A stretch of 64,000 bases of DNA. It comes from Vitrella brassicaformis CCMP3155. Taxonomy: Eukaryota > Protista > Chromerida. Below, in pieces: positions 20,573 through 33,660 of this stretch. The position numbers and the translations under genes were made by a program. Below the pieces are notes generated by a model. The model was given only the letters and a program-made list of their open reading frames with translations. It was not told where the DNA came from and made no database searches. The stretch spans positions 1 to 64,000 of the forward strand of contig CDMY01000055.1 in the NCBI GenBank assembly GCA_001179505.1, in the 5' to 3' direction. Numbering within the stretch: the stretch's first letter is position 1; the number at the start of each line of letters is the position of its first letter.

Positions 20573-22146
20573 CCGACTGACCGACCAGCTCAATGACCCA
20601 TTCACCCATTCACCCACCCCCCCACCCCCCATCCATCAGTGGTTGTCGTGTGTGCGCGAATGGAGAGATGGAGGGGTGATCCATGGATGGATGGCGTGGA
20701 TGAGTGCCCGAGTGTCGTTGGTGTCGATAGGGTCGGCTGGCTTGTGCATATGGTATACCCATGTAGATACTCAGAGGGGGGAGGGGGAGGGGGAACATGC
20801 GCATGTTCCTCCATCTTTGGCCCAGTGCTGTGTCTGTACTTGCCCGGCCCACATATGCCGCCCGTCCCTTGTGTCTCCTTGTTTTCGTCCCGCCATCCAT
20901 CGATACTGTCAGTCATGTGTTTGTTCTTTCTTTCGTCAGCAGCCATTTCGAGCGATCAACACATGCACGCGCACAGAACAGCACCGTGCGTACGTGCATC
21001 AACCAACGAATCAGCTACTGTAATGGCGGGCACTGATATAGAGGGGCGGCACATGTGCGTGTGGGCGTGCGTGTGTGTGATGCTAGGTGGCGGTTGGGCT
21101 TTGCCGGGCGGATGGCGGCGAGCTGGTTGTAAAGAGTGCAGGGGTGTGTGTTGGGGTGTGCGACTGTGTGTCCGTGTGCATGCCTGTGTGTGTGTGTGTG
21201 TGTGGGTGTCCTTGATGCTATTTATCCCCTTATTACGTGATGATGGAGAACTCATGGATTGCATGGCATGGATTGCATGGATGGCGTTGATGGCTTGACC
21301 AGGTTGTGTGTTTGATGCCCAGCAGTGCAGTGAGCTTATTGATCGGTAGATGGTGGGTGAGTGACAGCTTGTAGGTAGCTAGATGGATGGATGGCGCGTG
21401 CCTGCCTGCCTATGAGTAGGTCTATGGACTGCATACGTGTGCGCGTGTACCGTGCGTAGGTGTGCATATCTGTTTGTCCGTGTGCCTGGTGTGTCTTATC
21501 TAATTGTGCGCTCTCTGTCTTTCTGTCTGTCGTGTCCTTCTTTACTATGCAGCACCTGCAGTGCATTGCAGCACACACACCATCCGACGTTGTCGACAGA
21601 CAACTTAGGTACACAGCCACGCACAGCCATCCATCGTGGTGCATGCCGGCTAATCCTCCCTATATATCGGTGCGGTGGATGAGTGTGTATAGTCGCTTTC
21701 CACTCCCTGTCCGCATAATGTCCATCTTCGCCTGCCTGCCTGCCTACCTATGTGTTCATGGCGTATGTATTTATCCCTCCAATGAACGACTTGCGTCTTC
21801 ATGTGCCTCTGTCTGTGTGCGTCTCTCTGTGTGTGTGTGATGTGACTGTCTGCTGTCTGTGGTGCATTTGTTTTAAGTTACAGTGTGCCACTGACTGACT
21901 GGTTGAGATAAATTGGTATTATTATTGGTCACACGCATACACACACTCTATAAACACAACACCACACGCAGCAGCAGCAGAAGGCCCACACACAGACATG
22001 CACACCAGACAGAGACAGACAGAGAGCCCGACAAGAAAATCCATGCAGCAACCACCCTCTCCCCCCTCCCGCCGTCTCTCACTTACACACATACACACCC
22101 ACACCCGTCCGTCCCCCAGCCCGCCAGGCCATGTCAGTTGGTTGAG

Positions 22147-22354
22147 TCAGTTGTAGGCACTGTCCATTTTGGTCTGTAGGTGTTTCTTGTTATTCTCCAG
22201 CCCCTCCTCCAGCAGGTCCTTCTGCAGGTTGGGCAGCAGCACGATGATGTAGGCTGACAGCAAAGGCTGCACCAGCACGTCGATGAACCCGATCTGACAC
22301 TTGTACTGATTCGTCAAATCACGATCGCTGCACGCACACACGCACACACACGCA

Positions 22355-22391
<37 letters not shown>

Positions 22392-25300
22392 CATGCAGAT
22401 CGGCTGCGTTGCGTACCAGAATGGCGAGACGGGAAGGCCGAGTTGTTTCTCGAGGTCTCCTTGGTAGAAGAATTCCTCCATCATGCGGTCCATCCACCGC
22501 AGGTAAATCGGCTGTGGACGCGCAGCGAAGGCCAGATCCGCACAGCGAAGCGTCATGCTCAGCAACACCTGCACACATCCATCCATCGATCGATCCACAT
22601 GCACACACCACACAAAGGGGAGAGTCTGTCTGTGTGTGTGCGGTCACTTGTCTGTCTTCGGGTCTGTCGGTAGAGAATTCGCCCGAGACTTTGGTTCTGA
22701 ACATGCCCAGCTCGTTGGTGAGAAAGCGGATGTCCATCCGCAGGATCATGTCCACCAGCAACGCACGCAATATGTGATACCACGGCTGAGGGAGACACAC
22801 AAATCCATGCGTCCACAGACAAATGGTGTGTATGTGTGTGTGTGTGTGTGTCTATCGTTGTTTGCTTACCTTTAGTTCGCCGAGGAAGTTGAGTGCGGGG
22901 TCTTGGAGCAGACCGAAGACCACCGACAAAGTGTAGTTCTCAAGCACCGAAGAATCTGATGGAGACATGAGCACACGGATGCACGGTAACGGACCTAGTA
23001 GCGTGAGTGTGTCTGTGCATGCACCGACCGTTGTATCTGATTGCCCTGGGGTGCCGCGACTTGATCAAGAACTGATTCGTCACACCGCTGCAGTGAAAGC
23101 AACCAAGGAAGGAAACAGAAACAGCGGGCTGTTGTGCCCATCCATGCATCCAGCCAGTTATCTCAATGCGTGGCTTACGGGTGTCCATAGTGGCACACGA
23201 GAGCAGCGAAGAAGCCAGCAAACACATCAAAGTCACCCAAGTAACGCAGCAAAGGGCCCTGCATGTGTGCATGTACACCACCGAGGCCATTATCGCTCAT
23301 GTCTCTGTCTCTGTGTCTGTGTATCTTCGTGTGTGTGTGCCTATATGCCTTTTTGTAGAAGTAGTGTGTGGTCTGCAGCACGTCCCCCACGTGAGCCGCG
23401 TTGTGGAACCGGACCTCGGGGTGAAACGACTCCTGAATCCACCCACCCATCCATTCATCCATCCGCCATGCAACCAGAGAAGAGAGCGACCAACAGACAG
23501 GGCCACTTTGTGGGACGGACGGGTGCTGATACCTGCACTTTTTTGAGGAACGCGAAGAGAATGTCAAAGTCAAACTGAAACCGGCGGATGGTGTCGTAAC
23601 TGACGCACAATCACACACACATTCATGTCATGTCCGTCAGTTGGCTCATCTCACGAACATGTGTACCGGGAGAGTATGCGGACGAAGAGTATTGGGAGGA
23701 AGTGGATGTCGCATATCTCCGCCGCGAGGATGACGTCGAAGGACCACTCGTCGAGCGTGCGCATGACGTCCTCGATCTGGCTCTCCTCCTGACCCGATAT
23801 CTTGGCCAAGGAATACAGCTGCAGTATCAACTTGGACGCGTCACGGTCCAAATCAGCACCCGTCTGCCTGCACACACACAAACAGTGTAGAGACACACAC
23901 ACACACACAGATCAGGCCTCCCTCGCCCCCCCTCTGTGTGTGCCTCTCTCTCTCTCTCTCTGTGTCCATGCGTGTGTGTGTGTGTGTGTGTGCGAGAGAG
24001 AGAGAGAGAGAGGCACCTTCTGCTTTCTGACGGGCGTCTGCTGCGCTTCGCCCTCTGGGACCTCTTCCGCTCCCTCCCGCCCATCCCCCCAATGAAAGAC
24101 TGCGTCGAGCCGTCCTGGCTGGCCGCTCGTGTCCTCCCGCCGCCGTCGATGTCGAGCTGGCTCATGGACATGTTGGTGACGGTCATGTTGGTGGACATCA
24201 TGTCCACACCGGTGTGCTCGGGGAGGGCGGCCAGGACGGATGTCTGGTTGGTGGACGACAGCCAGGCGTCCACCTCGCCCTGGCCCTTGACGGTGTCGTC
24301 GTCGATGGCCATGTCGTACAGCTTGTTGGACAGGATTACCTCTATCACCCAGTTCAACTCGTCCTGTGTATCCACACACACACACGCGGGGAAGACATGG
24401 CTTCCTTGTTCGTGTGGGCGGGTGAGAGTGTGGGGTGGTGGGTGAGGGACCTTTAGGTACTGCGGCACTTGTTTGTTGGCCTGGAGGTCCTCAATGATCT
24501 CTATCACCTTCTCCACCTACACATACACACAGAGAAATGCACGGAAAGAGACATATGGGATGTGTTGAGGAAACGGAGGCATCCAAGCNNNNNNNNNNNN
24601 NNNNNNNNNNNNNNNNNNNNNNNNNNNNNNNNNNNNNNNNNNNNNNNNNNNNNNNNNNNNNNNNNNNNNNNNNNNNNNNNNNNNNNNNNNNNNNNNNNNN
24701 NNNNNNNNNNNNNNNNNNNNNNNNNNNNNNNNNNNNNNNNNNNNNNNNNNNNNNNNNNNNNNNNNNNNNNNNNNNNNNNNNNNNNNNNNNNNNNNNNNNN
24801 NNNNNNNNNNNNNNNNNNNNNNNNNNNNNNNNNNNNNNNNNNNNNNNNNNNNNNNNNNNNNNNNNNNNNNNNNNNNNNNNNNNNNNNNCCACCTGTGACG
24901 AGACATCCACCCCGAAGGCGCTTCTCTTCATATTCTTGAGCCTCTTGCGGCCCTCAGACACCTTGCGCAGCACCATCAGCACACGCATCAGACGCAGAAT
25001 ACGCAGCAACGCAAGTTTCTGACACACACACACACGACACAACCCAGGACACACCACACACCAGTATTCATAACACTGACTATGAACAGGTGGATCCATC
25101 CACTACTTTGCTCACAAACGCACCTTGACGTTCCCTCGGCCGAGGAAGATTCCAAAGAAGAATGAGACGAGCACGACGGCGGCGTCGGCGAGGTTCCAGA
25201 TGTTGTAGAGGAAGTCGGCGCCGTACGCGAATGTCTTGAGGATGATTTCCAGCACAAAGAAACTCAGGATCGTCATGTCGATGATATAGATCGTGTGCAG

Positions 25301-27735
25301 CGCCACCTGGTGGATGGTGGACGTGCATACGAGCATGGGCGCCTCGCTGTGTCACTGTGTGTGGTTTGTGCGGGTCCATACGTTGTCAGATGCCCAGAGG
25401 TAGCCGAAGAAGACGTCGACGAGCACAAAGATGCTGTAGAAACCCACCAGACTGACAGCCATCCAGCCACATACAGACGGGGAGAGCAGACCACAACGAA
25501 TGCCACTTTGAGAATGTCTGTGTGCGTCCATGTGATGTGTGTGATGTACCCTCCCCTACTCCCTCCCACGGACCCGAATATAGCGTATGCGACTGGTCTG
25601 AGCTCCATGAAGTCGGCCACTGCAAGCTGAATCTGGGTCCTGAACCAGGGAGGACATGAAAGCAGAGGACAGATGAGACACATGCACATAGGCAGGCCCT
25701 CTAGGGAGGGAGGGAGGTAGATGGATGGCTGTCTGCCTACCACACGTATTGCGTACATGAATGAGTCCTGGAATGGCCACTGGCGGAGATACTCCTCGTT
25801 GTACTCCTGTCAGTCGCGGTGTGAGTCGGCAGACACCGGACGTCATAGGCAGGCCTTATTCGACCACCAATCCAGTTAGTTGCTCACCTGTATACCGGGG
25901 TGCACGCGGCCGCACCGACGGATCAACACATACCATATCTGACACACATACATGCACACACACAATACACATGCAAATGTCGTCTCTCCTGAGTCTGCTC
26001 CCTCTGTGTGTCAGTTCACAATTGGTTGTATGAGGAGGTTTTTGATCTGGTCGACCACCAGCACGATGATGAAGGTCATCCATACCACCTCAGGGTTGCC
26101 TACACACACAGAAACCACGGCGCTCTCTCGGAGCTGCGTACGCACGTGTCTCTGCCCCGCCCTCACCTGCCCTCCCCTGCACGATGAATGGCCCGACGGT
26201 AAGCAGGGCCGACACACCGAACAGAGACACGAGGAGCATCTGCACGCCGCACTTGATGGCCGGCTGCTGACACTCCACCTCCTCCTCATCACTCGCTGAC
26301 CTCACACACACACGCGCGCATCCGCACACATGTAAGGGCCTTTGTGGTGTGTCTGTGTGTCTGTCGGTCAGTCTCACGCAGCTGTAGAATGAATATGATG
26401 AGGAGCTCTGCGACGATTTGCAGGGGGTTTGCGACGCATATGATGATCAGCAGGTGCAGCCAGGAGAAACACCACTTGCCCTCGCTGTCCGCACACACCT
26501 CATTGGGACCGGCCCTGTCGGATACCAATTCACACACACCACACACCACACACCACACACCACACACATGCGTCTCTCCCTTCCTACAGATGTGTGTATG
26601 TGTGTCCGCAGTGTTAACCAGAATTCTCCTGGGTCGTCGGGCGATACACAAAGCAGGTCGGTGGGCGTCTCGCTGCTGCCGGTGGGGCACGCCACACGGT
26701 TGTCGTCCTCGAAGTCGTCATTGCTCACCTCTGACGCACGGCTGATGAAGATCCATGTGTGATAGACAGACACAGAGACGTCACGTCATTCTCTGTCTAG
26801 TGTGCAATTGTGTGTACGTGCAGGCCGAGAAGCATGTCTGCAGGCGCTCTTCGCGGCCATCGGGGGTGGTCTGGTATGTCTTGGGCTTCCTGGCCACAAA
26901 CAAGGGGCACACACACACACACACACACGCACACACACACCTGTACCTGCTGCTGTGTACACACATCACAGATGTGTACGAGCGTACTTAGCGAAGTATC
27001 GGCATTGTCTGTAGTCTGAGTTTGAGAGTGTGGTGTCGTCCGGTGGTGCGGGGAATACAAAGAGCTCGTCGTACTTGTTGCCGCGGAACTTGAGCGACGT
27101 CGACACCTTGTGACACACCAACTCGGGGAAGTGCAGCTCCTCACACGCCGTCAGGCAACCCGTCCTGCACACACACACACACACACGTGTATGTATGTGT
27201 CTATCTGTGTGTGTGCAAGTATTGCCTGCCTGTATAGGAGCTGCACTTCGATGAAGGCTGTCCGCCAGGATGTGGTTTGTGCGGTGATGCAGAGGAGGAT
27301 CATCATCATGAAGAGGAACCGGCCCAGCCGGAAGATGGGACTCAGACGCTGGTCGGGCGGCAGATGCACCTCCTCGTACCTGCACACACATACACCCACA
27401 CACCGCCACACATGCATGTGTGTGGGTGTCTGTGTGTGTGTGTGTACCATAGTTTGGTGAAGTCGTTGTTTTGTTTGAGGTGGTTGGGGAGGGTGGCCAC
27501 ACGGATGTGGCCCTCCTCTGCGCACACGACCAACACACAGACACAGGGAGAGGTGAGGATGAGACAAAACTCAAGACGCCAACCCATCCGCACATCAACA
27601 ATGCTTGTGCTTGTGCATCCTTTCTCCCAGCTTCATGCGCAATACACCGCTGGTTCCCTCCCCACGCCACGCGAGAACTGCCAGCCACGAAGCGCCTCTC
27701 TTTTTCTTACCCGAGAGCATCATAGCGAACCACAT
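22147..27735 (-). CDS. Multi-pass membrane protein: Cys-rich multi-TM module + S1-S4 voltage-sensor domain + degenerate class I cyclic-nucleotide phosphodiesterase domain
   Basis: One continuous spliced frame over more than 20 exons (two GC donors, at 27229 and 23348). S2/S3: DMTILSFFVLEIILK...WNLADAAVVLVSF (25124-25306). S4: LLRILRLMRVLMVLRK (24893-25018). PDE: FHNAAH, CHYGHPG, ENYT, RMD, CADLAF, EFFYQGDLEKQLGLPVSPFCDR, CQIGFID. The 300-N gap lies inside a phase-0 intron. Confidence 0.85.
24589..24888. other. Assembly gap (300 N)
   Basis: Run of N. It is flanked by a GT donor after the S4 exon and an AG acceptor before the VEKVIEII exon on the minus strand. Confidence 0.99.
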
Positions 27736-30700
27736 GGTGACGACCGAACGAAGCCACTGTCGGCCTCACAGACGTTCAGCGCTGCACGCGACGGAGTCTG
27801 ATGGTGGGGGCCAGTCTCACTCCCCCATCGAAAAGCTCGCCCATCTGCGAAGAAAAGGGATGCGCGTGCTGGTGGTGGACGCGTACGGCCTCGGCGCTGA
27901 GGGCCGCAGTGCCTTCAAGGACTTCCTCTCCATCCTACACACCGCCTTCGAGGAACCATACGCCAAGTCACTCACCACACTCTCATTCTGCCTCAGGGGC
28001 CGCTCCGAGCTGCTGCCGCTGCTCAATGACCCTGGTACACAGCAACTGCTGCACAAAGGGGACACAGACAAACATGCTGACGATGCAAACCTTATGTAAG
28101 GATGGTTCTTCCGGGCCCTTCTGTCTATGCGTGTGTTTGTGCACAGCGACAGAGTTCACGTCTCACGCGGCGCAGAGGGCCTTCGATGCATTCGACGTCG
28201 TGTGCATCGCCGGTACAATGTCATAGTACATTGGAATCGGCACCTGCACTCACTGCAAATACCGCCTCCCTCCCTCTCTGGGGGGTGTTTGTATGTTATG
28301 TGTAGGAGAGGCGAATGTATTGCCGTGGGCGCCGGTGATGCACCAGGTGGGAGCCCTTCTGCGGATGTGTCTGCGGTGCGACAAACCCACCCTCTGTGTG
28401 GGATCGGCACTCCAGTCGCTCGTATTCATCGCGTCCATCGGTAGGCACACCCACGTGAGCAGATCCGGTCTATCCCGCATTGGTGTGTGTCTGCATCCAT
28501 GTGTGTGTGCAGGTGCCGACAGGATTCGCGTGTTCAACAACCGCGGGAGAGGGGGACGCATCGGCGACCTCAAACGAATCGCCGCTGACAAGACACTGGT
28601 GCGCACGACTGAGGGGCTGCGTGTCTCATGCGTGACCCCTTGCTGGTGTCGGTGTCTTGTTTTCTGTCTGCCTGCCTGCAGTTGTCCACTTTGGATGACC
28701 AGGACTGCTTCTTGGACTTCGCCACCGGTGGAAATAAGTCGATTGCACTTCCATTTCCTTTCTTGACTGCATCACAAACACATGTGTGTCCTTTTTCCCT
28801 TGGAGCAGGCGATGTGTACCGTCGGCATTTGGCGGCCAAGGAGACCGACACGATCCCCCCATTCTCGCCAGAGATGGCGGCCACGTCCCGATCGTCTGCG
28901 GCCCAGATGGTGCCGTCCGAGTGGTATCCTTGCCGCAATGTCGGCCTGCATTACCCCCCCGCCGCTGAGGAATTCCAGAGCTATGGACACACTGTCAGCC
29001 ATACAGACATCACACCTGTGTAAAGTGTGCATGATGTGCATGTGGGTGTCTCTCGCCTGTCTGTCTGTCTGTCTGTCTGTGTGTCTGTGTGTCTATGTGT
29101 GTCAGCTGCGCCGGCGGTCAACATACCGTGCTCGCGTGCGCCCCGCGGTGTTGGAGGGTGCGGGTGGCGACTTCGAGGGCGTCACGCCATCAGAGGTCCG
29201 CTCCACCGAAGTCCTCGTCAACATCAATAAGAGGCACGCAGCGAGACAGAAGAAAGAAGAGACAGCAAAAGTATGTATGGATGGCGACCCACCGCTGTAA
29301 TGTGTAGAGCGATGTCTCACTGGTCGCTGAAAGGCCTGCCCGTGTCGTTTGTGGCTCCGTGCCGTCACACATGGGAGGTGCACCACACGGTGCAGCCACC
29401 GATAGAGGTGCTGGGGTCGTCCAAGAAAGGCCCCCAGATCATCCAGCTGGGCCCGGCTTTCGCCATGCACTTCAGGACCACAAGACGGTGACACACATTC
29501 ACCTTCTCAGCCACAACGCCCCCATTGTGTGTGTGGTGTGTGTGCAGGTACCCCGAGACGGTGACAATAGTGAGCAGCTGGGTGAAGGGCGTCGTCATGC
29601 GCACACAAAGCGGTGGGGGGGATCTGTCCTTTCTTACGACACCTATTTGCCTCCGCTTCTCCCTGGTTTGTGCAGGTGAGTCGGTTGCATTTCGCGCCAG
29701 CCCCCGGCTGTCAATACCAGGGTACGTGACATGAATCTCACACATGAATGCCAAACATCCGTCGCTGTCTCTTCTTTCTCCCGTCTCACCAGCCCGTTGA
29801 CTGCTCGCCCTCAGGCAGACAAGGCGGCAACAGCAGCAAAAGTGGCTGCTGCTGCAGCTGGTGGTACCGAGGAGTCGCCATTGGCGAGTGCTCTTGCGTC
29901 CGGGACGGCCCTTGTGACGCCCAGGCCGGGGCACCTCACAGTGCGCACCGACACGGTCAAACCTGTGGGGCATCCGTCGAGGCAGATGAGGGCGGAGGGG
30001 GGAATGAGAGATGGGGAGGGACACAAGACCACACGTACAGTGTCCAAATGTGGGTGGAAGACGATGGCAGGCAGACAGACACACACAAAGGCAGACAGAG
30101 AGAGAAGTGCTCCGACATGGCTCCGCTCCCTGCTGTCTGCCTTTGTTTGTGTCCCCCAGACGCGTCCAAGGACTTCGTGCCTCGTGTGGCAGGCCTCAAG
30201 CACCGCAAGTCACGCGTATTCCGCCCACCCCCACCCCCCTCATCCCAGCCAGCCCCGCACGCACCGCCATCCGAGCAGCCCCCCACAACAATCAGCACCA
30301 AGCCACCACTTCCCTTCCTCCCGCCTCTCCCCCTCTCAACCATGAGCATCCCACAGCCGCCAGTGCCCGTGTCTCGCCCCATGGTGATCCGTGCGCAGGA
30401 TGAGAGCGACAGTGAGAGCGAGCGGGGCGTCGCCGCCTCCTCATCCTTCGGCGGCAGTCCGCGGACCGACGACCGGCTGGCGGCCCAGCCGCAGCGCACA
30501 CAGAGCATGAACGTCATGAGCGACACTGACGGCGAGCGAATGCGACTGCTGAGCTTCGAGGAGGCTGGGGGCGGTCTGGAGGGCGTGGAGCGGCTCAGTG
30601 GGGATGTCAGCGAGCGGGGGTACTATCCCACCATCACCAAAGAGAGAGCGCGGCAGATGCTGCATCCCGAGGAGAAGTGGGAGGCTTCCCCTGAGTCGAA

Positions 30701-31780: not shown

Positions 31781-33660
31781 TCACCCCAGCACTGTCCTCT
31801 CCAGCCCGTACTTGGCCAGCACGGGGCGGGCGACATTCACAGCAATGGGATAGTGCTCGATGGCCGTGCGGCCCTCTGTCGGCGCCTCGGTCGTCCAGAG
31901 GCTGATGCGGCCATAGACCAGCCGCAGATAGGCTGTAATGGTGTCGTTGGCTGCTGTGCCCTTGACGATGATAAGTCGCTCGCGGCCGTCATATCCCTGG
32001 GGTGGATGCTCATCGATGCCGTCGACGGTCTTGAAGCCATCGATGGTCGGTGCCGTCAGCAGGGACCGATAGCGAGTGTCACCAGGACCGACATAAGCAT
32101 CAGTCACCTTCTCCTCCCCCACCCCCTCTTGCTTACACCACTCCATCAGGACCGTCCCCTTGAGGAATGCCGTGAATGATGGGAAGACTAAGCCCCCACT
32201 GCGGATGACGGGATCGCTCTCGTTGTATGTGCTGCGGTAGCGGTGGTTGGGGGGCAAATCAGCGAGGGGGACGGTCGTGAAGTCGACATTGCCGATCCTG
32301 TAGCGCTGCCTCGTCACGCCCCCACCATGACCATCACCATGGTGTCCATTGCCTGGCTGCCCTCCTGGACCATCGCCCCCTGGTCCCTCTCCGCCACTCG
32401 CGTCACCGCCCCCGCTCTCCTGCTGGTGGTCGATGTCGTCATCGCCGTCCTCCTCATCTCCCCCCTCGTCCATGCCATCGTCGTTCTCATCATCACTGGC
32501 CTGGTCACTCTCACTTTGGTCGTCATCATCTTCCACCCGCTCCAGCGCCAGGCTGGTCCCCCGGTGGCTCAGCAAGTGGCCGAATGCCTTGTAGACGGCC
32601 AGGGCGAGTGGCAGCTCCTTGAATGCTGCAGCGGTGGGCAGCGAATCAGCCGACAGCCGCAGGGGCAGTGCCTTGATGAGCTTGTGATTGCGCGCCAGGT
32701 GAATGAAGTCGGCCATCTGCTGCCGCAAGAGCTCCCCTCCTTGCTCCAGTGCATAGGCGCATTTGCTGTAGTAATCGAACGGCGACCGATGCACGTCGAC
32801 GACGCCGGTCAAATGGTTGCTGTCGAGCGAGCCGTTGATGCGCTTGAGCATGAAGGCCTCGTTGATGAGCTGTTTGCCGTGGTGGGTGTTGGCTCCCCTC
32901 GCCGAACTGATGGCCTCGTCGACAGGGAGGTAGCCCAGCACACCATCGCAATAAACGTCGGCCGGGAGCCGGTTGGCCGTCACGTCAACTGGATTGTCAC
33001 CATCAGCAGCAGCGGCTGTGGGGGTGGTGGTGGTGGTGGTGGGGTGAGGGGTGCCAGGTTGCTTTGTGGTGTCTGGTTGACAGGGGGGAGGGGGCGGGGC
33101 GGCCGAGATGTGGTGGGCGATGGTCTGAACGGCACCGGACATGGCCGAGAGGGTGGGTATGGTCGACTTGACAGATGACCACTTCTGGCAAATGATGGGC
33201 GCCTGAATTCCCATGACAAAACAGACGACATGTGGTAAAGGGAGATGTGTCGAGCCGCCCGTCTCTCTCTCTCTGCGCTGCGAGTATTTCCCTCACCTGG
33301 TCAGTGGCAATGGATGTCATTATTAGAGGCTCGACGGCCGACACCTCACTGGCCACCTGACAAAGGGAACACACAGACAGACATACGCCATCGCGACGTG
33401 CATCCCTCAGTGCGTCGATGTCTGTGTGTCCTTCACCTGCTCTATGAGTGAGTGTATGGCCGCCAGCCGACGACAGACGTCGCCCGACCCGCCACACACT
33501 TGGGACTCCTGTGCAGACAGAGACCAAAGGCACCTCAGTGAGACTGAGTTATCCACCCAGTGATGTGCTGTGCCTCACTCACCGATGCCGATGGACTGTG
33601 CCCCTCCTGCTGGTGCTGCTGTTGCTGCTGCTGCTGGTGGTGAGCGGCCGCATCACTCAT
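31781..33660 (-). CDS. Lineage-specific expanded family protein (short coiled-coil exons, helical domain, acidic/Gly linker, conserved C-terminal domain), intact
   Basis: Four exons with phase-0 introns: MSDAAAHHQQ...SPSAS|ESQVCGG...IEQ|VASEV...TDQ|APIICQKW..., then a large open exon ending LERTVLG*. Confidence 0.85.

What the first reader, a model, noticed from the sequence alone, without database searches (positions are those of the whole stretch)
22147..25660. Stand-alone voltage-sensor domain fused to a cyclic-nucleotide phosphodiesterase domain (candidate voltage-to-cNMP coupling protein)
Seen in one spliced frame: S1 (AYAIFGLVGFYSIFVLVDVFF), S2 (DMTILSFFVLEIILK, with the charge-transfer Phe, Glu and Lys), S3 (WNLADAAVVLVSF, with Asp) and S4 (LLRILRLMRVLMVLRK; Arg at i, i+3, i+6, i+12). 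S4 is followed by a basic linker (SEGRKRLKNMKR) with no S5-pore-S6, then a PDE8/PDE4-like helical segment (VEKVIEIIEDLQ...DELNWVIEVIL..KLY) and a complete class I PDE fold. Established: pore-less VSDs control enzymes in voltage-sensing phosphatases and form Hv1, and ciliates and Plasmodium have channel-fused adenylyl cyclases. Inference: an analogous voltage-sensing PDE-domain protein. I know of no functional characterisation of this architecture, but could not search for one.
Basis: partly seen in the sequence, partly recalled or inferred. Interest (0 to 1): 0.9.

Follow-up and report, generated by a model that had tools for sequence, protein, structure and literature searches.

The report
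Pore-less voltage sensor fused to degenerate phosphodiesterase
This Vitrella gene really does join a channel-type voltage sensor without a pore to a cyclic-nucleotide phosphodiesterase fold on one transcript, as in a whole untested alveolate family, but this copy has lost the enzyme's key metal-binding pair, so it probably senses rather than degrades cAMP/cGMP.

Summary
A 26-exon minus-strand gene (27735-22147, about 989 aa) encodes S1-S4 of a CaV-like voltage sensor, a basic helical linker and a full PDE4/PDE1-like fold.

The N gap lies inside an intron. A spliced RNA contig joins 24893 to 24516 in frame, and homologues show no insertion there, so the gap hides no pore.

- The protein is not a bare voltage sensor. 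A conserved 4-TM module with a Cys-rich ectodomain lies upstream (exons 25757-27735). Its fold occurs only in this PDE family.
- The catalytic H-D metal dyad is replaced by C-H. H233, T271 and N321 are also lost. The gene sits in an old "degenerate" clade, separated at 100/100 support from a clade with intact sites.
- The gene is already annotated (Vitrella brassicaformis, PF00520+PF00233). The architecture has been noted for Toxoplasma PDE4/PDE16, without any voltage test.

Gating arginines and the F/E/D charge-transfer centre are invariant or nearly so across 21 homologues, so a working voltage sensor is likely. Canonical hydrolysis is unlikely.

This scan had already found paralogues on other DNA of the same genome (s1-233243, s1-221628).

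Interest is moderate to high: an uncharacterised voltage-sensor-to-(pseudo)PDE family.

The parts
22147..27735 (-). Whole gene: 26 exons, a continuous 989-codon ORF with its stop at 22149-22147. It matches the annotated Vitrella brassicaformis protein P0042 (979 aa).
   Evidence: model; 98.9% identity to P0042; spliced RNA contigs on the minus strand.
27711..27735 (-). Exon 1. The ATG is at 27735 (MWFAMMLS...) or at the annotated ATG, 27723. The upstream ATG matches homologue N-termini such as MYWFQMILS in Oxyrrhis.
25757..27517 (-). Ten exons of the N-terminal module: TM-a, a ~150-aa Cys-rich beta ectodomain, then TM-b, TM-c and TM-d with a conserved D-Q-x-K-N.
   Evidence: X1 introns 26742-26817, 26515-26618 and 26296-26377; the module is conserved in homologues. 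AF2 pTM 0.80; the fold matches only PDE-family clusters.
25382..25639 (-). Two exons encoding the pre-S1 helix and S1 (AYAIFG|LVGFYSIFVLVDVFF).
   Evidence: Y378 is invariant.
25124..25306 (-). S2-S3 exon. It carries the charge-transfer centre: F-x-x-E in S2, plus the S2 Asp and the S3 Asp.
   Evidence: Ion_trans E 4.9e-7. D406, E416 and D437 are invariant and F413 is at least 90% conserved; phmmer hits.
24893..25018 (-). S4 exon (Arg at i, i+3, i+6, i+12) followed by the basic linker RKVSEGRKRLKNMKR...GVDVSSQ.
   Evidence: R463 is invariant, R466 and R469 at least 90% conserved; an RNA contig covers 24889-25020.
24517..24892 (-). Intron holding the assembly gap (N at 24589-24888). GT is at 24892-24891 and AG at 24518-24517.
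   Evidence: The DNA contigs of X3 and X5 also break at the gap edges.
24017..24516 (-). Two exons. They encode the conserved linker helices (VEKVIEIIEDLQ ... LNWVIEVILSNKLY), then a low-complexity, disordered stretch.
   Evidence: the linker is conserved family-wide; helices at 493-526, pLDDT below 50 at 527-634; intron 24364-24450.
22147..23867 (-). Nine exons of the PDE4/PDE1-like catalytic fold. H-N-x-x-H is at 23349-23432. C-H in place of the H-D dyad is at 23179-23258. The Gln switch and Phe clamp are in the last exon.
   Evidence: PDEase_I E 6e-61. PDE4C/D E 4e-57, with alignment. TM about 0.9 to PDE4; motif table.

Best explanation
The locus is one gene for an eight-helix membrane protein of an alveolate voltage-sensor-PDE family. 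From N to C terminus it has:
- a family-specific 4-TM module with a disulfide-rich ectodomain;
- a CaV3-like S1-S4 voltage-sensor domain with no S5-pore-S6;
- an S4-contiguous basic helix and two conserved linker helices (S-x-V-E-K-V...L-x-W...S-N-K-L-Y);
- a disordered spacer;
- a PDE4/PDE1-like catalytic fold.

Likely mechanism (inferred): depolarisation moves S4. The movement passes through the rigid basic linker to the PDE-fold domain, as in voltage-sensing phosphatases.

In this copy, and in its whole clade, the two-metal site is dismantled (H200-D201 become C-H; H233, T271 and N321 are lost). The nucleotide-clamp residues (Q369, F372, Y329, W332) are kept. The domain therefore most likely binds cAMP/cGMP, or acts as a regulatory partner of catalytically intact paralogues, and does not hydrolyse by the canonical route.

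Shown: gene structure, splicing across the gap, domain identities, family membership and residue conservation. Inferred: voltage sensing, coupling and loss of catalysis.
For: - Spliced RNA contig across the gap, and further GT..AG introns.
- Continuous 989-aa ORF, 98.9% identical to the annotated Vitrella protein.
- Ion_trans matches over S1-S4 only, with a full PDEase_I.
- Homologues with the same two domains occur in Chromera, Perkinsus, Amoebophrya and a dinoflagellate (MGD). The Oxyrrhis protein shows PDEase_I but no Pfam Ion_trans hit and was recovered through its S2-S3 segment. The Colponema sequence is truncated and shows Ion_trans only. A 248-member, mostly ciliate Atlas cluster also carries both domains.
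- Invariant in 21 sequences at 27-40% identity: D406, E416, D437, R463. At least 90% conserved: F413, R466, R469.
- The nearest solved voltage sensor is CaV3.3 repeat II, E 8e-17.
- The linker is conserved family-wide.
- The family splits into two clades at 100/100 support, and both contain Perkinsus and Amoebophrya.
- Clade 1 keeps HD, ENHH, ATD and SNP. Clade 2 is variable at the dyad (C-H, A-H, A-N, M-Y, M-N, A-Y) but conserves other motifs.
Against: - There is no electrophysiology or enzymology for any family member.
- Cys and His are both zinc ligands, so a one-metal or altered site could still catalyse.
- This copy keeps E230, D318 and the Gln switch, which several clade-2 relatives have lost.
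- The R4 position of S4 is Met, leaving four in-register charges.
- The AF2 full-length model has pTM of only 0.45, so the domain arrangement is not informative.
- The proposed heterodimer with intact paralogues is speculation.
Confidence: 0.55

Rival explanations
1. It is a catalytically active voltage-regulated PDE. The C-H pair with H164 and D318 still holds a metal, and membrane potential tunes cAMP/cGMP breakdown.
For: - The fold is complete and close to PDE4.
- H160, H164, H204, E230, D272, D318, Q369 and F372 are kept in this copy.
- Cys and His can both ligate zinc (general chemistry).
- Clade-1 relatives have fully intact sites.
Against: - The bridging Asp that holds both metals in all characterised class I PDEs is absent.
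- H233 and T271, which support the second metal, and N321 are replaced.
- The dyad positions vary freely within clade 2, so they are not under selection for metal binding.
- Vo et al. report many substitutions of catalytic signature residues in TgPDE4, a Toxoplasma PDE that also carries an ion-transport domain (PMC7720076). Whether TgPDE4 is an orthologue of this clade was not tested.
Confidence: 0.25
2. The S1-S4 bundle is only a membrane anchor or a voltage-insensitive relic. The protein is not regulated by potential.
For: - Many voltage-sensor-like domains (TRP channels, polycystins) are weakly voltage-sensitive or insensitive (established knowledge).
- R4 is Met.
- No functional data exist.
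Against: - Gating arginines R1-R3 and the F/E/D charge-transfer centre are invariant or at least 90% conserved across two clades that diverged before Perkinsus, dinoflagellates and chromerids split. A mere anchor would not preserve buried charges.
- The linker after S4 is equally conserved.
Confidence: 0.12
3. The voltage sensor itself, alone or with the 4-TM N-module, conducts ions (Hv1-like or omega-type). The PDE-fold domain acts as a cyclic-nucleotide sensor that gates it, so information flows from nucleotide to membrane.
For: - A pore-less voltage sensor forms the channel in Hv1 (established). Hv1 structures appear among the sequence hits.
- The nucleotide-clamp residues are kept while catalysis looks lost.
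- TM-d of the N-module carries a conserved D-Q-x-K-N.
Against: - There is no Hv1 signature. The S1 Asp is not conserved and S4 has no R-x-W-R-x-x-R.
- The nearest relatives are CaV voltage sensors.
- No solved fold gives the N-module a pore-like identity.
Confidence: 0.06
4. The fusion is an artefact: two genes, or a pore domain hidden in the assembly gap.
For: - The gap length is only estimated.
- X1 has no assembled contig over 25650-26249.
Against: - An RNA contig joins the S4 exon directly to the linker exon in phase 0.
- All 19 homologues that cover this region are collinear across that junction and across the upstream exons.
- The independently annotated protein spans the same exons.
Confidence: 0.02

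Closest known systems
Alveolate 'clade B' PDEs with a partial ion-transport domain (Toxoplasma gondii TgPDE4 and TgPDE16)
   Same: - An N-terminal portion of pfam00520 followed by a C-terminal PDEase_I domain.
- TgPDE4 is reported to have many substitutions among the catalytic signature residues (PMC7720076, PMC8809380).
- The review PMC10865986 places this clade in free-living alveolates, including Vitrella and Chromera.
   Different: - Orthology to TgPDE4/16 was not tested here, because their sequences could not be fetched.
- The papers speak of ion transport, not of a pore-less voltage sensor.
- They describe neither the N-terminal 4-TM/ectodomain module nor the two-clade split.
Voltage-sensing phosphatase (Ci-VSP / TPTE family)
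   Same: A pore-less S1-S4 voltage sensor is joined through a short basic linker after S4 to a cytosolic enzyme fold. The expected logic is S4 movement controlling the cytosolic domain.
   Different: - The effector is a class I PDE fold, not a PTEN-like phosphatase.
- There are four extra TM helices and an ectodomain before S1.
- A long disordered spacer lies between linker and effector.
- The effector's catalytic metal site is degenerate.
Human PDE4 and PDE1 catalytic domains
   Same: - Same fold (Foldseek TM about 0.9, roughly 32% identity).
- H160, H164, H204, E230, D318, Y329, W332, Q369 and F372 are conserved.
   Different: - H200-D201 become C-H, H233-H234 become Y-T, T271 becomes M and N321 becomes F.
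- There are no UCR or calmodulin-binding regulatory regions. The protein is membrane-embedded through eight helices.
T-type calcium channel (CaV3) repeat II voltage sensor
   Same: It is the best sequence match of S2-S4 among solved structures (E 8e-17). It shares F-x-x-E, the W-N-x-x-D of S3 and the arginine register of S4.
   Different: - There is no S5-pore-S6 and only a single repeat.
- The K4 position is Met.
Rhodopsin-PDE and channel- or ATPase-fused cyclases of protists
   Same: A membrane sensor module is fused directly to a cyclic-nucleotide enzyme. This design theme is recurrent in alveolates and choanoflagellates (my own knowledge; PMC13466520 for P4-ATPase-GC).
   Different: The sensor here is a voltage-sensor domain, and the enzyme domain is probably inactive.

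Membership tests
Voltage-sensor domain (S1-S4 of Ion_trans, PF00520) | Four-helix S1-S4 bundle recognised by the family profile | tested here: met
   Pfam Ion_trans at 367-479, profile positions 4-114 of 241, E 8.9e-11. AF2 helices at 365-392, 396-424, 432-450 and 456-490. CaV3.3 VSD-II E 8e-17.
Voltage-sensor domain (S1-S4 of Ion_trans, PF00520) | S4 with basic residues at every third position | tested here: met
   R463, R466, R469 and R475 (i, i+3, i+6, i+12). R463 is invariant; R466 and R469 are at least 90% conserved in 21 sequences. The R4 position is Met.
Voltage-sensor domain (S1-S4 of Ion_trans, PF00520) | Charge-transfer centre: aromatic plus acidic residue in S2 and an acidic residue in S3 | tested here: met
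   F413-x-x-E416 and D437. E416 and D437 are invariant; F413 is at least 90% conserved.
Voltage-sensor domain (S1-S4 of Ion_trans, PF00520) | Gating-charge movement with voltage | not testable with these tools
   Needs voltage clamp of the expressed protein.
Pore-less voltage-sensor protein (VSP/Hv1 type) | No S5-pore-S6 after S4 | tested here: met
   The profile stops at position 114 of 241. The RNA junction 24893|24516 leaves no room for a pore. Homologues are collinear across it. After S4 come linker helices, disorder and then the PDE fold.
Voltage-sensing phosphatase | PTEN-like phosphatase domain after the linker | tested here: not met
   The cytosolic domain is PDEase_I. This is a working analogy only, not membership.
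Class I cyclic-nucleotide PDE (PDEase_I, PF00233) | Complete catalytic fold | tested here: met
   PDEase_I profile 1-233 of 238, E 6e-61. PDE4 TM about 0.9.
Class I cyclic-nucleotide PDE (PDEase_I, PF00233) | H-N-x-x-H motif (H160 and H164 of PDE4D2) | tested here: met
   FHNAAH.
Class I cyclic-nucleotide PDE (PDEase_I, PF00233) | H-D metal dyad (H200, D201) before H-P-G | tested here: not met
   It reads C-H-Y-G-H-P-G. C aligns with H200 and H with D201. Other clade-2 members have A-H, A-N, M-Y, A-Y or M-N.
Class I cyclic-nucleotide PDE (PDEase_I, PF00233) | Second-metal shell (E230, H233, T271) and D318 | tested here: inconclusive
   E230 and D318 are kept. H233 becomes Y and T271 becomes M.
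Class I cyclic-nucleotide PDE (PDEase_I, PF00233) | Glutamine switch and hydrophobic clamp (Q369, F372) | tested here: met
   K-C-Q-I-G-F-I-D. N321 is replaced by F.
Class I cyclic-nucleotide PDE (PDEase_I, PF00233) | cAMP/cGMP hydrolysis | not testable with these tools
   Needs an enzyme assay.
Alveolate voltage-sensor-PDE family (TgPDE4/16-type architecture) | Partial Ion_trans N-terminal to PDEase_I in one protein, plus the conserved S-N-K-L-Y linker | tested here: met
   The aligned full-length homologues carry both domains, apart from Oxyrrhis (no Pfam Ion_trans hit) and the truncated Colponema sequence, and they share the linker. Tree.
Alveolate voltage-sensor-PDE family (TgPDE4/16-type architecture) | Orthology with T. 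gondii PDE4 or PDE16 | not tested
   The Toxoplasma sequences were not retrieved by the word-indexed searches. The link rests on the papers' domain descriptions.
Polycystin-like membrane module (for the N-terminal 4-TM plus ectodomain) | Structural similarity to a polycystin TM/TOP region | tested here: inconclusive
   The best VIA match is polycystin-1 residues 3247-3610, Z 8.4 over 148 residues, within the noise range for helical bundles. Foldseek against PDB gave nothing with E below 1. Language-model look-alikes are polycystin or mucolipin clusters at 0.72, a lead only. No Pfam hit.

The most novel reading that the evidence does not exclude
This is a natural 'sensor-only' member of a voltage-sensor-PDE family. 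A working voltage sensor is coupled to a PDE fold that binds but does not hydrolyse cAMP/cGMP. Membrane potential would then control nucleotide binding or buffering, or the activity of a catalytically intact partner. The reverse is also possible, with nucleotide binding biasing the voltage sensor. Together with its intact paralogues, this would be a second class of voltage-sensor-coupled enzyme after the voltage-sensing phosphatases. It would wire membrane potential directly to cyclic-nucleotide signalling across alveolates.
Probability: 0.35. Interest if true: 0.85.

Novelty: new variant of a known kind. Interest (0 to 1): 0.62.

Why it matters
Only one enzyme class, the voltage-sensing phosphatases, is known to be driven directly by a voltage-sensor domain. 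A conserved alveolate family that places the same kind of sensor in front of a PDE fold would link membrane potential to cAMP/cGMP without a channel or calcium step.

The organisms concerned use cyclic nucleotides to control motility, secretion and life-cycle switches. They include ciliates, dinoflagellates, Perkinsus and coccidian parasites.

The split into an intact and a degenerate clade offers a ready-made comparison for coupling studies. It also marks a likely pseudo-enzyme whose role is unknown.

The family-specific 4-TM/ectodomain module has no match with E below 1 in Foldseek against solved structures. Its only significant matches among AlphaFold DB fold clusters are other PDEs. It hints at a second, extracellular input.

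The gene is annotated only as 'PDEase domain-containing protein', so this reading is not in the databases.

Tried and rejected
- Hidden pore or separate genes: rejected by the RNA junction and by homologue collinearity.
- My first splice choice ...FMYAIRV|IQL was replaced by the annotated ...FM|TQIQ (intron 25640-25756), which fits the homologue spacing.
- My first register, 'HD becomes HY', was wrong. The alignment to PDE4C and to clade 1 shows H200-D201 becoming C-H.
- Hv1-like proton channel: no S1 Asp conservation and no R-x-W-R motif.
- Pfam on the upstream exons and on the linker exons gave nothing.
- Foldseek against PDB for the N-module gave nothing with E below 1. The polycystin-1 match by VIA (Z 8.4) is too weak to file the module there.
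- Word-indexed searches did not retrieve Toxoplasma PDE4/16.
- Literature searches for voltage-sensing, voltage-gated or voltage-dependent phosphodiesterase, and for voltage-sensing domain with phosphodiesterase domain, found no paper. A ciliate search found none that bears on it.
- The full-length AF2 model (pTM 0.45) was not used for inter-domain geometry.
- The spliced protein itself could not be handed to the search or fold tools. The near-identical annotated protein P0042 was used instead.

Full report
**What is at the locus.** The coding strand is minus. Pfam on single exons gives Ion_trans on the S2-S3 exon (E 4.9e-7) and weakly on the S4 exon. It gives PDEase_I on several downstream exons, best E 8.9e-14.

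**The gap.** I laid two RNA-type and two DNA-type public runs on 22050-28049.
- Run X1 holds only the exonic quarter of the words, and its contigs carry GT..AG joints on the minus strand, so it is spliced RNA.
- One 288-nt X1 contig lies on 25020-24889. It then jumps to 24512-24450 and again to 24362 and below.
- With the stated offsets, the introns are 24517-24892 and 24364-24450.
- The donor GT is 4 nt from the gap edge, and the junction is phase 0 (...GVDVSSQ|VEKVIE...).
- The pieces account for the contig's whole length, so no exon is hidden in the gap in this transcript.
- The DNA contigs of X3 and X5 also end at the gap edges. The missing sequence is probably a repeat inside the intron.

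**Gene model.** I combined the X1 introns with GT/GC..AG sites that keep the frame. This gives a continuous ORF of 989 codons in 26 exons, 27735-22147. It is 98.9% identical to a database protein of Vitrella brassicaformis CCMP3155, P0042 (979 aa), named 'PDEase domain-containing protein' and carrying PF00233+PF00520. The window is therefore Vitrella, and the gene is already annotated as one protein.

The model and the annotation differ in three places:
- The annotation starts at the second ATG. The upstream ATG gives MWFAMMLS..., which resembles homologue N-termini.
- The annotation's junction ...FM|TQIQ fits the homologues better than my first choice, so I adopted it.
- Before the gap, the annotation uses an earlier donor and lacks VDVSSQ. 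The RNA contig and the homologues support the longer form.

Upstream of S1 lie about 345 residues:
- a long TM helix;
- a ~150-residue beta-rich, Cys-rich ectodomain (C179 and C192 invariant);
- three more TM helices, the last carrying a conserved D-Q-x-K-N.

This module is conserved in homologues from Chromera, Oxyrrhis, Colponema, Perkinsus and others. Modelled alone it gives pTM 0.80.
- Foldseek finds nothing in the PDB with E below 1.
- In AlphaFold DB clusters it matches only two entries, both named Phosphodiesterase.
- The best structure-only match is polycystin-1 TM residues 3247-3610, Z 8.4, within the noise range for helical bundles.
- Language-model look-alikes are polycystin or mucolipin clusters at 0.72.

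I leave the module unexplained, with a polycystin-like origin as a lead only.

**The voltage sensor.**
- On P0042, Ion_trans covers only profile positions 4-114 of 241.
- The nearest solved sequence is the repeat II sensor of CaV3.3 (E 8e-17). NaV, NavAb-type and Hv1 sensors appear further down the list.
- In an alignment of 21 family members at 27-40% identity to P0042, the invariant columns include D406 and E416 (S2), D437 (S3) and R463 (S4). F413, R466 and R469 are at least 90% conserved.
- This is the gating-charge and charge-transfer signature of working sensors (established knowledge of Kv/NaV/VSP).
- AF2 draws S4 as one helix from 456 to 490 running into the basic stretch, followed by helices at 493-506 and 512-526.
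- This linker (S-x-V-E-K/R-V ... L-x-W ... S-N-K-L-Y) is conserved across the whole family. That is what one expects of a coupling element.

**The PDE domain.** PDEase_I is complete (E 6e-61). The closest solved relatives are PDE4C/D (E 4e-57) and PDE1B, and the model superposes on PDE4 with TM about 0.9.

| PDE4D2 residues | In this protein |
|---|---|
| H160, H164, H204, E230, D272, D318, Y329, W332, Q369, F372 | present |
| H200-D201 | C-H |
| H233-H234 | Y-T |
| T271 | M |
| N321 | F |

 In all characterised class I PDEs, H164, H200, D201 and D318 hold the zinc, and D201 bridges to the second metal (established structural knowledge). The canonical two-metal site therefore cannot form.

**Family and clades.**
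- A phmmer search with the 61-aa S2-S3 exon over 1.8 billion representatives returned only 24 hits. Four of the ten scanned had partial Ion_trans plus PDEase_I.
- Word-indexed searches added more, from Perkinsus, Amoebophrya, Vitrella and unnamed assemblies.
- Names given by the sources are generic.
- An Atlas cluster of 248 mostly ciliate proteins carries both domains.
- A maximum-likelihood tree splits the family into two clades at 100/100. Perkinsus and Amoebophrya occur in both, so the duplication predates the split of these lineages.
- Clade 1 keeps every catalytic motif.
- Clade 2, which holds the window's gene, varies freely at the dyad (C-H, A-H, A-N, M-Y, A-Y, M-N) and often has E230 as Q and N321 as W. 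It nevertheless conserves its own motifs (H-P-G-L-T-N, R-H-P-x-A-I-x-Y-N-D, A-D-L-S-W-x-C-R-P, Q-G-D-L-E-K), as shown.
- This is the pattern of a domain that has lost catalysis but kept a selected function.

**Literature.**
- Vo et al. [quoted passage not shown]
- Moss et al. 2022 (PMC8809380) state that TgPDE4 and TgPDE16 contain portions of pfam00520.
- The 2023 review (PMC10865986) puts them in a clade B shared with free-living alveolates. Vitrella and Chromera are in its sampled taxa. It says they are expressed only in cat stages.
- A Euplotes paper reports PDEase_I and Ion_trans genes as always adjacent (PMC8670190). These may be split models of the same fusion.
- None of four searches pairing voltage sensing with phosphodiesterase turned up a paper that characterises voltage sensing by a PDE. 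A ciliate search found nothing that bears on it either.
- The domain combination is therefore known, but its reading as a voltage sensor and any functional test are not.

**Earlier notes of this scan.**
- Another first-stage note on 22147-23620 called the domain a pseudo-enzyme that keeps its nucleotide pocket (s1-221755). My residue table agrees.
- Two paralogues on other pieces of the same genome were already followed up: one frameshifted, one with an intact PDE (s1-233243 and s1-221628). I did not re-examine them. They fit the two-clade picture.

**Verdict.** The gene is a member of a known but functionally untested alveolate family. It is a divergent copy in which a well-preserved voltage sensor is attached to a PDE fold that has probably lost canonical catalysis.

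| Claim | Probability |
|---|---|
| Architecture as described | about 0.95 |
| A working voltage sensor | about 0.6-0.7 |
| Loss of canonical hydrolysis | about 0.65 |
| Combined best explanation | 0.55 |

Noticed in passing
window 23259-23348 and 27165-27229 (minus strand): Two introns of this gene appear to use GC..AG instead of GT..AG. The annotated protein uses the same junctions, but no RNA contig shown to me covers them.
   Followed up: partly
window 24893-24911 (minus strand): The annotated protein P0042 uses an earlier donor and lacks six residues (VDVSSQ). The RNA contig and all homologues include them, so this is a likely small error in the public gene model next to the gap.
   Followed up: yes
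window 23860-24020 and 24589-24888: DNA contigs of the public runs break at a CA/GA microsatellite intron and at both edges of the N gap, so the gap is probably a simple repeat inside the intron.
   Followed up: partly
P0042 residues 299-327 (window about 25888-26099, minus strand): The last helix of the N-terminal module carries a D-Q-x-K-N motif that is nearly invariant across the family (D307 at least 90% conserved). A buried polar cluster with no explanation.
   Followed up: no
window 31784-33292 (minus strand): A 503-codon open frame with a long acidic low-complexity stretch. It has no significant Pfam match (CobT E 0.12) and is presumably the neighbouring gene.
   Followed up: partly
window 22179-22498: The RNA run X2, labelled as a different organism (B), holds the last two exons with no mismatch. 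The label may hide the same species, or there may be cross-contamination.
   Followed up: no
literature, PMC8670190: In Euplotes, PDEase_I and Ion_trans genes are reported as always adjacent. These may be split gene models of the same voltage-sensor-PDE fusion.
   Followed up: no
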